NCBI GenBank assembly: GCA_904063045.1
Contig: CAJFCJ010000007.1
Coordinates: forward strand, 3,727,404 to 3,791,403
Direction: 5' to 3'
DNA: 64,000 nt
From: Dimorphilus gyrociliatus
Lineage: Eukaryota > Animalia > Annelida
The notes beneath the pieces are model-generated. The model was not told where the DNA came from and did not search any database. It saw only the letters and a list, made by a program, of their open reading frames with translations. The translations under genes and the position numbers were made by a program. The first letter of the stretch is position 1, and each line of letters starts with the position of its first letter. This document shows positions 233 to 47,141 of the stretch, piece by piece.

Positions 233-8664
<8,432 letters not shown>

Positions 8665-42900: not shown

Positions 42901-43124
42901 TTTTTATTCGTAGGATATTCTGTGATTTTATCTTTAACGAAAATGAAAGAACACAACACTTTTTTTTTGGAAGATTTTCAACTAATTTTTCTCTGAATTC
43001 ATTAGAGAGTTTACTGTACATAATAATATGATATTCTATCATTCACTTAGCTTGTTTTATCATTATCTTGATAGGATTAACAAAACACTTTGCCTTTGTT
43101 TTATCAACAGGGTAAAGCAGGGAA

Positions 43125-45103
43125 ATGAAAGGTTTCAACGATGCTATTCATGGATACATCAATATAGATCCTTTGTTGATTCGAGTTATAGATACTAGGC
43201 AATTTCAAAGATTACGTCATATTAAACAATTAGGAGCGTGCTATTGGGTTTATCCAACCGCTTGTCATAATCGCTTTGAGCATAGTATTGGAACTTGCCA
43301 TCTCGCCCAATTACTGATTCAATCTCTACGGGAAAAATTGCATGCTGATAGTCATTTGGGCGTTGAGATTAGTGACAAGGATGCGTTTTGCGTGTCATTG
43401 GCTGCTCTTTGCCATGATTTAGGTCATGGACCATTCTCTCACATGTTTGATGGTCGGTTCCTCTCTAAATATCCAGAGTATGCGCGGCGACACGAAGAGA
43501 TGAGTGTTGAAATGCTTAAACATTTGGTTGAAAAAAACGATTTAATGAAGATCTTCAAACAAAGATTTCCAGATTTTGACGATAACGATTTAATATTTGT
43601 CAGCGAAATGATTCGAGGACCTGACGAAACGGGTGAATATAAAGGAAGAACAGACAAAAAGAAAAGGTTATTCTATTCTAATACAGCCAATCACTTTATA
43701 ACTAAATATAATATTTTACAGATTTTTGTACGATATCGTCTCTAATAAACATAGTGGCGTCGATGTAGATAAATTCGATTATATTGCCCGCGATTCCTTC
43801 TATCTAGGAATCGATTCCAGCTTTGACCATACAAGATTTATTCAATACGCAAAAGTTGTTAAGGTTCAAAATGAAAATGAATCCGAATCCTTTCAAATTT
43901 GTACGAGAGAGAAGGTAAAGTAACAGTTTGTTATTTTCTACCGTCCAAAAAAAAGCGAACTACATTTTCGGACAGGCTGCTCGCGATATGTACGCCCTTT
44001 TCTATTCAAGAGCTGAACTTTTCGAGCGAGCATATCATCATCAAACGAATAAAGTTATAGACATTATGTAAGTTTCAGCTTCATTTAGTTTTTTAATCAT
44101 TTAGTCTGATCGTGTAGTTCGTTTCAATAATCCTTTTGAAGATTGCTAATAATACAACTCTTTATTTTTCTAAATGCGAATTTTTTGGTAAGTCTTTGGT
44201 CATTGATTTTCAGGAAGTCGAAGTAATGTATGATCTGTTTCATATGCGTGCTGTATTGTATCAGAGAGCTTATTGTCATAAAACAAAGATGATTATTGAA
44301 CACAGGTAGGTGAAAAGCATAAGACATAGGAAAAATAGATAATTTCCTACGTTTGCTTGTTTAACGCTTTTTGAAAATTAAAGATTACGCCATAAACAAA
44401 AATTTTTCATTGAATAACGATTTAACTGACTGATAGAGCATTTCTTACTTGCTAATCTATTTATTGTTTTATAACTGAGTAAATTTGAATTACATTACTA
44501 ATATTAAATTTCTTGAATTTTTAAAGGTTAAGTGAAGTGCTAGATCTCTCTGTAAAGCATTTGAAGTTTCGCAAACAATCTGACCTTGAAAAGACATACA
44601 ACATACTAGAAGCCACGAACGATATAGAAGTTTTTGAACAATTAACTGATAATATATTTGATCGTATAAAATATTATGATGATCCTAATAATTCCGATAT
44701 GAACCGGGCTAAGGAATTACTGATGAGAATTGATGAAAGAAAACTATTTAAATTCGTAGCAGAGATCAGGGGTGATTTAGCAGATAAACAATCTCTATTG
44801 GATGACATCATGTCTCGTTCGAGTATAAAGATTGACAAAAAGAAAATAATAATAGATAGAATGAAAATTGACTACGGAAAAGGACAAGAAAATCCTATAA
44901 ATTTTTTATATTTTTATAAAAAATCCTGCCCAGATAGAGGAGTGAGAATGTACCGCGAAGATATTAGTAATTTGCTGCCAGTATCTTATTGTGATAGAAA
45001 ACTAAGAATATATTACGAGGACGATGACAAGGCCATTATTGACGAATTGTCAGCAATAATTGACGATTTTAAACGTAATGGGTTACCTACATCTTTGTCC
45101 TGA
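43125..45103 (+). CDS. SAMHD1: SAMHD1-like dNTP triphosphohydrolase copy 1 (HD domain only, no SAM), with a duplicated internal exon
   Basis: IDTRQFQRLRHIKQLG, HNRFEHSIG, CHDLGHGPFSHMFD, DVDKFDY, KIDYG..NPINFLYFY. In-frame TAA before ATG 43125. Final exon 44528-45103. Confidence 0.93.
43976..44067 (+). other. SAMHD1 copy 1 alternative exon A (92 nt, phase 0-2)
   Basis: gacag|GCT...ATTAT|gtaagt encoding AARDMYALFYSRAELFERAYHHQTNKVIDI(M). Confidence 0.85.
44214..44305 (+). other. SAMHD1 copy 1 alternative exon B (92 nt, phase 0-2)
   Basis: ttttcag|GAA...CACAG|gtaggt encoding EVEVMYDLFHMRAVLYQRAYCHKTKMIIEH(R). Homologous to exon A and to the single exon in copy 2. Confidence 0.8.
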
Positions 45104-45505
45104 GATATATGCAAAAAGAAACTTGTCTTTCGAAACTAACATCTCTCTATAAATTTATCTTTAAAATTTATTCATCTGCACAATTTTAATGTGCTTCAAC
45201 TTGAACACTTTGATAATTGAAAACAATCTATATATATATTTATACACTATATGATACTTTTTCTGGAAAAGGAACCTTTTATAAAACCCGAATTCTACAT
45301 ATCTGACTTCTACGAAACTCACTAAACAAAATCTGTTCCTCATTTTGTTATATTTATTGTATATTTAATCATCTTCTTTAAGTTTAAAATATATGCCTAA
45401 TAGGAAAAATGTGATAAGAAAAAATAGTACTAATATATTAAATGCGGCTATCTGTGTAGTTTAGTTTAATATTTAAACTTTTACGGTATTGATAACTTGA
45501 TAATT

Positions 45506-47141
45506 ATGGCATCGAGTTTTGACGCAATAGAAAGTAAGATCTTTAATGATCCAATTCATGGACATATGGGTTAGTAATATTTAATAGACTATACAATATT
45601 TATTATTTATACTTTTTCTTTTCTCTATTAAAAGATTTTGATCCTCTTCTAATAAAGGTTATTGATACACCTCAATTTCAACGTTTGCGACATATTAAGC
45701 AGTTAGGAAATTGTTACTGGGTCTATCCATCCGCTAATCACAATAGGTTCGAACATTCTCTAGGAACGTGCTATTTAGCGTCTAAGCTGGTTCAATCCCT
45801 TAAGAACGGATTAGACAATGATTTAGAGATTGAGATAACGGAAAAAGATATATTTCTCGTCTCTTTAGCCGCACTTTGCCATGATTTGGGGCATGGACCG
45901 TTATCGCACGCTTTTGATGGTATTTTCCTGGAAAAATTGGAACTAAAAAAGAAGCATGAAGATTTATCAGTTGAGATGCTCGATCGTCTTCTTAAGGAGA
46001 ATGACTTAATACCGAAATTCAAAGAGCGCTTCAACGATTTTGACGACGAAGTTGATATAGAATTTGTAAGAGAACAGATAAGAGGTCCAAAAGAAAATGA
46101 TGTTTTAATAGGATTAAAAGATAATAAAAAAAGGTAGTATCACTTGGTGAAATCCCAATATAGTAAGAACTAGTCTATTCTGACTATAGATTCCTTTACG
46201 ATATCGTGTCGAACAAAGAAAGTGGAGTGGACGTCGATAAATTTGATTATATCGCAAGAGATTGCCATCATTTAGGAATTAAATCAACTTTTGATCATTC
46301 CCGTTATATTAAACTGGCTAAGATCATTAAGTCTGGTGATTCTTATAAAATATGTATCAGAGAAAAGGTATAAATAGAGAAAAATCCTTAGAAATTGATA
46401 AATTCTTCACAGTTTTATTGATTATTTTTTCAAGGAAGCGAGAAATATTTACGAACTTTTTCATATGAGATTAGTTCTACACGACAGGGCGTATCAGCAT
46501 AAAACATGCAAAGCTATTGAATTAATGTGAGTATTTATATTCTATTGCAAAAGAAAAAAAACACACAACAAAACAATTAATTAATAAATAAGTACTACCA
46601 TTCACTATCCAATAGGATGATGGATGCTCTATACTCGGCCAAGGACCATATTAAGGTTATCACAAGTAATAAGGAATTAAAACTTGAGGAAACAGTTAAC
46701 AATGCCGAGGCCTTTGAACAATTAACCGACAACACCATTTTTGGTTTACGTTATACGACTGATCCTAATTTGAAAGAATGTCGAGAACTGCTGGAGAGAA
46801 TTGACCAAAGGAAAATCTATCGTTGTATGTACCAAGGAGATATTTCGTTGAAAGAAAATGTTGATATGATACTAGAAGATTACAAAGATAAAATCATCAT
46901 CGCACCAGTGAACTTAAACTATGGAATGAAGAATTTAAATCCGGTTGATCATTGTTGGTTTTATGAAAAGTCAAATACCAAGGAATGCTTCACTATAAAG
47001 AAGGAAGAGGTTAGTCAATTTCTACCTCAAAAATTCTCGGAAAAGCGTATTAGAATTTACTATAAAGGGGTTGACAAGGAAGAGTATGAGGAGATAAAGA
47101 AGAAATTAATTGAGGAACTAAACAAGCAGCATACTAATTAG
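45506..47141 (+). CDS. SAMHD1: SAMHD1-like dNTP triphosphohydrolase copy 2 (HD domain only)
   Basis: KIFNDPIHGH, IDTPQFQRLRHIKQLG, HNRFEHSLG, CHDLGHGPLSHAFD, DVDKFDY, FHMRLVLHDRAYQHK, NLNYGMKNLNPVDHCWFY. Confidence 0.94.

What the first reader, a model, noticed from the sequence alone, without database searches (positions are those of the whole stretch)
43976..44305. Tandem duplicated, mutually exclusive exons that swap the dNTP-binding helix of a SAMHD1 enzyme
Seen in sequence: copy 1 has two homologous exons, A (43976-44067) and B (44214-44305). Each is exactly 92 nt, phase 0 to phase 2, with a canonical AG and GT, and either one splices in frame between ..TREK and LSEVLDL.. . Because 92 is not a multiple of 3, including both or neither frameshifts the mRNA, the usual enforcement of mutually exclusive splicing. 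Established knowledge: this segment matches human SAMHD1 355-385, which supplies R366, H370, Y374 and Q375 to the catalytic pocket and N358, R372, H376 and K377 to the allosteric dNTP site. Exon A reads N358D, H370F, Q375H, K377Q. Exon B reads N358V, H370Y, Q375C, with K377 kept. Copy 2 keeps N, H, Q and K. Both exons keep R366, R372, Y374 and H376. Inference: one gene may make two dNTPases with different substrate or activator preference, giving three enzymes from this locus. I know of no such splicing switch in SAMHD1, but could not search.
Basis: partly seen in the sequence, partly recalled or inferred. Interest (0 to 1): 0.9.

Follow-up and report, generated by a model that had tools for sequence, protein, structure and literature searches.

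The report
Duplicated active-site exon in worm SAMHD1
A SAMHD1-type nucleotide-degrading enzyme gene of the tiny marine worm Dimorphilus gyrociliatus carries two conserved alternative copies of the small exon that builds one active-site helix, but public RNA so far shows only copy B in a finished full-length message.

Summary
The gene is DgyrCDS6559 of Dimorphilus gyrociliatus. It has two homologous 92-nt exons with AG/GT borders: A at 43976-44067 and B at 44214-44305. Either one keeps the frame between exon 2 (which ends at 43914, not 43917) and the last exon (which starts at 44527, not 44528).

Both exons exist in a distant relative (dS above 1). There the introns are scrambled, yet each exon has only about 2 replacement changes against 11-12 silent ones. 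Both are therefore translated and constrained.

RNA contigs of the same species show the joints exon 2>A and exon 2>B at about equal depth, and B>last exon. No A>last-exon joint appears in any of four RNA data sets. Instead, exon A runs on through the A-B intron into exon B, which puts a stop codon right after exon A. The public annotation uses exon B only.

New here: a conserved 19-bp RNA stem (43953-43973 with 44104-44124) encloses exon A and covers its acceptor region. No shuffle matched its strength in either species.

Verdict: this is a genuine conserved alternative exon pair, but strict mutual exclusion and a full-length A enzyme are unproven. Earlier notes of this scan report many other duplicated alternative exons elsewhere in this genome, but none for this gene.

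The parts
43125..45103 (+). SAMHD1-like gene copy 1 (DgyrCDS6559), CDS from ATG to stop. It has no SAM domain. An in-frame stop at 43113-15 lies upstream of the ATG.
   Evidence: Gene model built. Annotated range and 467-aa product. The annotated protein P0398 is identical to the exon-B model. PDB SAMHD1 hits reach E=1e-53.
43125..43666 (+). Coding exon 1, which holds the HD motif.
   Evidence: Joint 43666>43722 is seen in RNA of runs X7 and X5. Pfam HD domain.
43722..43914 (+). Coding exon 2, ending ..ICTREK. Its donor is shared by both alternative acceptors.
   Evidence: Joints 43914>43976 and 43914>44214.
43953..43973 (+). Upstream arm of the conserved RNA stem. It covers the last 23 nt of intron 2, that is, exon A's acceptor region up to 1 nt before the AG.
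   Evidence: It is the top inverted repeat in both species. Duplex energy is -27.4 and -25.2 kcal/mol, reached by 0 of 2000 shuffles in each species. It pairs 19/19 and 18/19. It is 20/21 nt identical between species, against 13/38 for the rest of the intron.
43976..44067 (+). Exon A, 92 nt, an alternative alpha13 helix (human 355-385). It is not in the public annotation.
   Evidence: Sequence. The ortholog in L002 at 2858-2949 has 11 silent and 2 replacement changes. The acceptor is used in RNA of three species. Use of the donor is not seen.
44068..44213 (+). The A-B intron. It is retained in every RNA contig that contains exon A. The stop TAA lies at 44069-71.
   Evidence: records 16 (X7), 11 (X5), 5 (X4) and 2 (X1). 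Read-through translation.
44104..44124 (+). Downstream arm of the stem, a conserved island inside the A-B intron.
   Evidence: It is 16/20 nt identical between species, against 11/29 and 36/80 for the intron on either side.
44214..44305 (+). Exon B, 92 nt, the alpha13 helix of the annotated protein.
   Evidence: Joints 43914>44214 and 44305>44527 in X7. The ortholog in L002 at 3093-3184 has 12 silent and 2 replacement changes. P0398 contains it.
44527..45103 (+). Last coding exon (C-terminal lobe).
   Evidence: Joint 44305>44527. 68% aa identity to the relative's ORF P0001.
45506..47141 (+). Tandem paralogue copy 2 (DgyrCDS6560). It has a single canonical 92-nt alpha13 exon at 46435-46526.
   Evidence: P0279 matches the window exactly. 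Exon coordinates.

Best explanation
DgyrCDS6559 is an apparently active SAMHD1-type dNTP triphosphohydrolase gene. Its 92-nt exon for helix alpha13 was duplicated in tandem before D. gyrociliatus split from a distant relative. Alpha13 carries base-contact, phosphate-contact, allosteric-site-2 and tetramer-interface residues.

Shown: both copies are translated and kept by purifying selection. The upstream exon splices to A or to B about equally often.

Inferred: the choice is gated by a conserved 19-bp stem between the acceptor region of exon A and the A-B intron. When the stem forms, it hides that acceptor and loops exon A out, so exon 2 joins exon B and the annotated full-length enzyme is made. 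When it does not form, exon 2 joins exon A.

I think it most likely that exon A is meant to give a second full-length enzyme through A>last-exon splicing. That would happen in cells, stages or conditions that are rare or absent in the bulk RNA available. The A-B intron is never seen removed. In bulk RNA the exon-A transcripts are therefore dead-end forms that also carry exon B and stop right after exon A.

The two enzymes would differ in two ways. At position 375 they would have His or Cys, where 117 of 117 other animal SAMHD1s have Gln. They would also differ at all five residues of the alpha13-alpha13 interface.
For: Anatomy and frame logic.

Conservation against a relative with saturated silent sites: exon A 86% and exon B 84% nt identity, against 47-62% in the introns.

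Selection: dN/dS is about 0.03 for A and about 0.01 for B. Most differences fall on third codon positions, 10 of 13 in A and 12 of 14 in B. Binomial p is 2e-6 and 7e-8.

Exon A's GTAAGT donor and its 92-nt length are conserved.

RNA: joints exon 2>A (depth 102) and exon 2>B (depth 98) in same-species run X7, and exon 2>A also in two related organisms.

Stem.

All catalytic and allosteric residues outside the exon are kept.

Roles of R366, Y374, Q375 and N358, and the alpha13 interface: PMC11074143. Role of H370: PMC8063254.
Against: No A>last-exon joint appears in contigs of four RNA runs from three or four organisms.

The contigs through exon A's donor and through the B>last-exon joint are unbranched. 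Any A>last-exon path was therefore absent or weak enough to be pruned.

The B-to-last-exon intron has zero depth in X7. The abundant exon-A molecules therefore already have B joined to the last exon and can never become a full-length A form.

No second, competing stem round exon B was found, so a classical docking/selector switch is not shown.

Only two genomes were available for covariation. The stem is supported by conservation and by one-sided changes only.
Confidence: 0.45

Rival explanations
1. Exon A is the coding end of a short protein. The intron-retaining mRNA (exon 1, exon 2, exon A, then a stop) is the real product. It would give a 276-aa SAMHD1 core that ends in its own version of helix alpha13 and lacks the C-terminal lobe. 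Such a protein could join or cap tetramers of the full-length B enzyme as a regulatory or dominant-negative subunit. The RNA stem would set the ratio of long to short form.
For: This is the only exon-A form seen. It makes up about 50% (X7) and about 40% (X5) of transcripts, and it recurs in three related organisms and a metatranscriptome. It explains the coding constraint on exon A without an unseen joint. Alpha13 is the Dimer-2 interface, and A differs from B at all five interface positions.
Against: The truncation removes the part that carries R451, K455, K523 and the lobe that packs on neighbouring active sites, so stable folding is doubtful. The last residues of exon A (..TNKVIDIM) are perfectly conserved despite silent changes, which is unusual for a free C-terminus. 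The conserved strong donor and the frame-compatible 92-nt length have no use under this reading. The stop follows automatically from any GTRAGT donor in this phase, so it says nothing either way.
Confidence: 0.3
2. Use of exon A's acceptor is regulated unproductive splicing. It diverts about half of the transcripts into a stop-containing form, which is degraded or held in the nucleus, in order to set the level of the B enzyme. Exon A has no protein role of its own.
For: The only exon-A RNAs seen carry a premature stop more than 200 nt upstream of the last joint. The conserved stem over the acceptor fits a dosage switch.
Against: Poison exons are constrained as RNA, not as codons. Here 10 of 13 differences in exon A fall on third codon positions, with 11 silent against 2 replacement changes while neighbouring introns are scrambled. 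Exon A also keeps the family's invariant Y360, F363, R366, L369, A373, Y374 and H376. An isoform at 40-50% of steady state is not being degraded efficiently.
Confidence: 0.15
3. Exon A is a dead relic of a partial duplication, or an assembly artefact.
For: It is absent from the public annotation.
Against: It is present and intact in an independent assembly of another species, with only 2 of 31 residues changed at dS above 1. It is present in RNA contigs of several runs, and its acceptor is used.
Confidence: 0.02

Closest known systems
Mutually exclusive exons that arose by tandem exon duplication (surveyed in PMC5740500 and PMC9741552)
   Same: Two adjacent homologous exons of equal length (92 nt) and equal phase. 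The length is not divisible by 3, so including both or neither breaks the frame. Both are conserved as coding sequence. Both replace the same structural element of the protein.
   Different: The defining outcome, one and only one exon in the mature mRNA, is shown only for B. Exon-A transcripts seen so far also contain exon B and the intron between them.
RNA-structure-controlled exon choice: docking/selector systems and looping-out stems (PMC6071210; ATE1 exons 7a/7b, PMC7797038)
   Same: Conserved complementary intronic boxes flank an alternative exon and cover its splice signals. They form conserved islands in introns that are otherwise diverged.
   Different: Only one stem was found, round exon A. 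There are no competing selector sequences and no stem round exon B. No mutational test has been done.
Known SAMHD1 isoforms, such as the mouse C-terminal splice isoforms (PMC4678485). Human variants lacking exons 8-9 or exon 14 are recalled from memory and were not checked here.
   Same: Alternative splicing of a SAMHD1 gene that changes the protein.
   Different: The known variants skip exons or change the C-terminal tail. None swaps a homologous active-site helix. Searches for SAMHD1 together with 'mutually exclusive' splicing found nothing relevant.
Human SAMHD1 (PDB chains such as 7ujn and 4bzb)
   Same: HD-domain dNTPase core at E=1e-51 or better. All metal, catalytic and allosteric residues outside alpha13 are kept.
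   Different: No SAM domain and no T592 tail. Q375, otherwise invariant, is Cys in B and His in A. H370 is Tyr in B and Phe in A.

Membership tests
SAMHD1-type HD-domain dNTP triphosphohydrolase | Significant sequence similarity to SAMHD1 over the HD core | tested here: met
   Exon 1 against PDB SAMHD1 chains gives E=1e-53 to 1e-49. Pfam HD domain.
SAMHD1-type HD-domain dNTP triphosphohydrolase | Metal and catalytic residues H167, H206, D207, D311, R164, H210, H215, H233, K312, Y315 | tested here: met
   All are present in copy 1.
SAMHD1-type HD-domain dNTP triphosphohydrolase | Allosteric-site residues (K116, D137, Q142, R145, R451, K455; N119, D330, R333, R352, K354, K523) | tested here: met
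   All are present. V117 is G.
SAMHD1-type HD-domain dNTP triphosphohydrolase | Canonical substrate-contact residues of alpha13 (R366, H370, Y374, Q375) | tested here: inconclusive
   R366 and Y374 are kept in both exons. Q375 (117 of 117 in other animals) is H in A and C in B. H370 (114 of 117) is F in A and Y in B.
SAMHD1-type HD-domain dNTP triphosphohydrolase | dNTPase activity and nucleotide-dependent tetramerisation | not testable with these tools
   Needs recombinant protein.
Mutually exclusive exon pair | Adjacent homologous exons of the same length and phase with intact splice sites | tested here: met
Mutually exclusive exon pair | Both exons maintained as coding sequence in relatives | tested here: met
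Mutually exclusive exon pair | Each exon joined to both the upstream and the downstream constitutive exon in mature RNA | tested here: not met
   B has both joints. A has only the upstream joint. No 44067>44527 joint appears in four runs. The data are contigs, so a rare form is not excluded.
Mutually exclusive exon pair | Transcripts with both exons are absent or rare | tested here: not met
   RNAs that contain A, the retained A-B intron and B make up about 40-50% of transcripts. A spliced A+B form was not seen.
RNA-structure-gated alternative exon | Conserved complementary boxes over or round the regulated exon, stronger than chance | tested here: met
RNA-structure-gated alternative exon | Compensatory (two-sided) base changes or mutational proof | tested here: inconclusive
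   Only two species are available. Two pairs are kept through one-sided changes and none through a two-sided change.

The most novel reading that the evidence does not exclude
Exon A is a dedicated coding end for a programmed short SAMHD1. A conserved intron-retention mRNA, dosed by an RNA stem, would give a 276-aa catalytic core ending in a private version of the tetramer-interface helix. That short protein would join full-length subunits, of this gene or of the many SAMHD1 paralogues and pseudo-enzymes in this genome, to tune or cap their assembly.
Probability: 0.3. Interest if true: 0.65.

Novelty: new member of a known kind. Interest (0 to 1): 0.45.

Why it matters
SAMHD1 sets cellular dNTP levels and restricts viruses and retroelements. 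Its substrate pocket, its second allosteric site and one tetramer interface all meet on helix alpha13. A natural gene that keeps two versions of exactly this helix offers a ready-made experiment on several questions: how residue 375 and the interface shape specificity, activation and assembly, and how a compact-genome animal diversifies or doses an immune-type enzyme by splicing. Both versions differ from the otherwise invariant Gln375 and from each other at every interface residue, and both have been conserved for a long time. The public annotation misses exon A. The conserved stem gives a directly testable splicing switch.

Tried and rejected
- Looked for a second, competing stem (intron-arm or exon-B acceptor region against the B-to-last-exon intron). 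It was not better than shuffles in the window, and only marginal in the relative at a non-homologous place.
- RNAalifold suggested an alternative pairing of the intronic arm with the 3' part of exon A. It was no better than shuffles and was dropped.
- The whole-region folding z-scores are unremarkable, -1.2 and -0.9. Only the specific stem stands out.
- Searches for more relatives gave little. The last-exon protein search found one relative only. The metagenome scan gave 80 loci, none above 51% identity. None of the 84 loci held, apart from the relative's own, has two adjacent alpha13 segments.
- The Fundulus SAMHD1-like isoforms X1 and X2, of equal length, differ only in the last residue, so they are not an exon swap.
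- Literature searches for SAMHD1 with 'mutually exclusive', with invertebrate paralogues and with splice variants found no exon-swap report.
- The A isoform was not folded or searched as a whole protein.

Full report
**What is there.** The window is AT-rich animal DNA with very short introns. On the + strand lie two tandem SAMHD1-like genes.

Copy 1 has this CDS:
- exon 1, 43125-43666
- exon 2, 43722-43914
- exon A (43976-44067) or exon B (44214-44305)
- last exon, 44527-45103

It encodes 467 aa with either exon. Both exons are 92 nt. Each is preceded by AG and followed by a good GT donor, GTAAGT for A and GTAGGT for B. They share 50/92 nt and 13/31 aa. Including both gives a stop at codon 280, and including neither gives a stop at codon 248.

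Only the flanks are off: exon 2 ends at 43914 and the last exon starts at 44527.

An in-frame stop at 43113-15, which lies inside the transcribed 5' leader, shows that the protein starts at 43125 and has no SAM domain.

Copy 2 (45506-47141) has one 92-nt exon of the same phase at 46435-46526. No further copy lies in the window.

**Whose genome.** Copy 2 is an exact match to DgyrCDS6560 (P0279). The locus is GCA_904063045.1 contig CAJFCJ010000007.1. Copy 1 is DgyrCDS6559 (P0398, 467 aa), which is identical to my exon-B model. Exon A is therefore absent from the public annotation.

**Family and residue mapping.** Exon 1 hits PDB SAMHD1 chains at E=1e-53. Exon A residues 4-29 and exon B residues 2-29 align to human 358-383 and 356-383.

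I aligned the segment against 117 other animal SAMHD1 proteins:
- Q375 is invariant (117/117). It is His in A and Cys in B.
- H370 is 114/117. It is Phe in A, Tyr in B, and His in the relative's B.
- R366, L369, A373 and H376 are invariant, and Y374 is 113/117. All five are kept in both exons.

Outside this exon, copy 1 keeps all metal, catalytic and allosteric residues. It therefore looks like an active enzyme with an unusual pocket in either version.

From the literature:
- R366 contacts the substrate phosphates. Y374 stacks on the base. Q375 hydrogen-bonds the base, and Q375A/N lowers kcat 15-20-fold.
- N358 contacts the dNTP at allosteric site 2.
- N358, D361, H364, S368 and R371 on adjacent alpha13 helices form the Dimer-2 interface of the tetramer (PMC11074143).
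- H370A lowers activity (PMC8063254).

**Relatives.** The closest sequences in the protein collections are ORF fragments from Logan assemblies of one other organism. Its contigs L001-L003 carry the same tandem gene pair.

Both exons are there, in the same order, 92 nt each, with AG/GT borders. Nucleotide identity to the window is 86% for A and 84% for B, against 82-83% for exons 1 and 2, 70% for the last exon and 47-62% for the introns.

Silent sites are near saturation (pS 0.57-0.75). Even so, exon A has 11 silent and 2 replacement changes, and exon B has 12 and 2. That gives dN/dS of about 0.03 for A and about 0.01 for B. Most differences fall on third codon positions: 10 of 13 in A and 12 of 14 in B. 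Binomial p is 2e-6 for A and 7e-8 for B. Both exons are therefore read by ribosomes in this frame and their protein sequence matters. A dead relic is excluded.

A third paralogue in the relative (L004) has a single exon that resembles B (21-22/31 aa). Exon A is about equally far from every other version (12-16/31). B is therefore the ancestral type, and A is a diverged duplicate that has since been frozen.

**RNA.** I laid contigs of four runs on 43050-45200. Run X7 is the same species, with all pieces at least 99% alike. It is clearly RNA: introns 1 and 2 are removed and depth is zero in the B-to-last-exon intron.

X7 shows these joints:
- exon 1>exon 2
- exon 2>A (43914>43976, depth 102)
- exon 2>B (43914>44214, depth 98)
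- B>last exon (44305>44527, depth 246)

The contig with the exon 2>A joint runs on unbroken through exon A and the whole A-B intron into exon B (record 16). The same continuity appears in three other runs:
- a related organism at about 90% identity (X5, record 11, preceded by that species' exon-2 end)
- another related organism (X4, record 5, with 118 nt of exon 2 joined to A, running 57 nt into the intron)
- a marine metatranscriptome (X1, record 2)

No run shows 44067>44527 or 44067>44214.

In X7 exon B has no continuation other than the joint to the last exon. The exon-A molecules are therefore exon 1, exon 2, A, retained intron, B, last exon. They stop at TAA 44069-71, one codon after exon A, and they can no longer give a full-length A form. 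They make up about 51% of transcripts in X7 and about 40% in X5.

One caveat applies. These are assembler contigs, which prune weak branches. A minor A>last-exon form, perhaps up to a fraction of local depth, is not excluded. The tissue and stage of the samples are also unknown.

**A conserved stem.** In both species the best inverted repeat of the region flanks exon A: 43953-43973 with 44104-44124 in the window, and 2836-2856 with 2981-3001 in L002. The evidence for it is as follows:
- The upstream arm is the last 23 nt of intron 2, ending 1 nt before the acceptor AG.
- Duplex energy is -27.4 and -25.2 kcal/mol. In each species 0 of 2000 dinucleotide shuffles of the intron reach it, and no other partner in the region comes close.
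- It is part of the MFE and centroid folds in both species.
- 19/19 and 18/19 positions pair. Two pairs are kept through one-sided changes.
- Both arms are conserved islands: 20/21 and 16/20 identical, against 13/38, 11/29 and 36/80 beside them.

I infer that the stem hides exon A's acceptor and loops the exon out, which favours exon 2>B. This is not tested. No second stem round exon B reaches significance, and an alternative pairing with exon A itself is at chance level. A docking/selector competition is therefore not shown.

**Interpretation.** These points are settled:
- The exon pair is real, old, coding and alternatively used.
- The B form is the productive annotated mRNA.
- A conserved structure lies over A's acceptor.

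What exon A makes is open. I give these odds:
- About 0.45: it supplies a second full-length enzyme in contexts not sampled. This fits the conserved donor, the frame-compatible length, the kept family-invariant residues and the perfectly conserved C-terminal part of the exon. It also fits the fact that the A-B intron is never seen spliced, as expected between exclusive exons.
- About 0.3: the intron-retaining mRNA is the product and encodes a 276-aa core ending in its own interface helix.
- About 0.15: purely unproductive splicing. This fits the RNA but not the codon-level constraint.
- About 0.02: a relic or an artefact.

**Novelty.** Tandem-duplicated alternative exons and structure-gated exon choice are well-known kinds (PMC5740500, PMC9741552, PMC6071210, PMC7797038). 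I found no report of such an exon pair in SAMHD1. Earlier notes of this scan list many duplicated alternative exons in other genes of this genome, and several SAMHD1 pseudo-enzyme paralogues, but not this pair. I class it as a new member of a known kind, of moderate interest until the fate of exon A is resolved.

Noticed in passing
window 44188-44193 (L002 about 3069-3074): A 5'-splice-site-like GTRAGT is conserved in both species. It sits inside the A-B intron, 19 nt upstream of exon B's acceptor AG, in sequence that is otherwise diverged. No joint uses it in the RNA contigs, and its role is unexplained. It may be a decoy donor.
   Followed up: partly
window 44106-44110 (L002 2983-2987): The conserved downstream arm of the stem contains CTGAT (CTGAC in the relative). 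This matches the branch-point consensus CTRAY and lies about 42 nt after exon A's donor. The arm may therefore have a second role.
   Followed up: no
L004:306-397: The relative has a third SAMHD1 paralogue with a single B-like alpha13 exon. That exon reads C at position 374 and K at position 375, so it is yet another rewritten pocket. The 113-nt intron before it leaves no room for an A-like exon.
   Followed up: partly
P0039 (DgyrCDS14884), elsewhere in this genome: A D. gyrociliatus SAMHD1 paralogue has RN in place of the HD motif and has lost R164, H210, H215 and H233. It keeps all allosteric-site residues. This matches earlier notes of the scan on SAMHD1 pseudo-enzymes.
   Followed up: partly
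window 43107 and upstream: The X7 transcript contig continues for 255 nt upstream of 43107 with letters that do not lie on the stretch laid. Copy 1 therefore has a non-coding leader exon spliced in near 43107-43110.
   Followed up: no
window 45569-45634: Copy 2 has an extra short intron that splits the first coding exon (..IHGHM | DFDPLL..). Copy 1 lacks this intron.
   Followed up: no
window 45089-45107: The marine metatranscriptome run X1 (95-99% alike) carries a 3'-end variant of copy 1 in which 17 nt are replaced by 50 other letters. This is probably a strain or sister-lineage difference.
   Followed up: no
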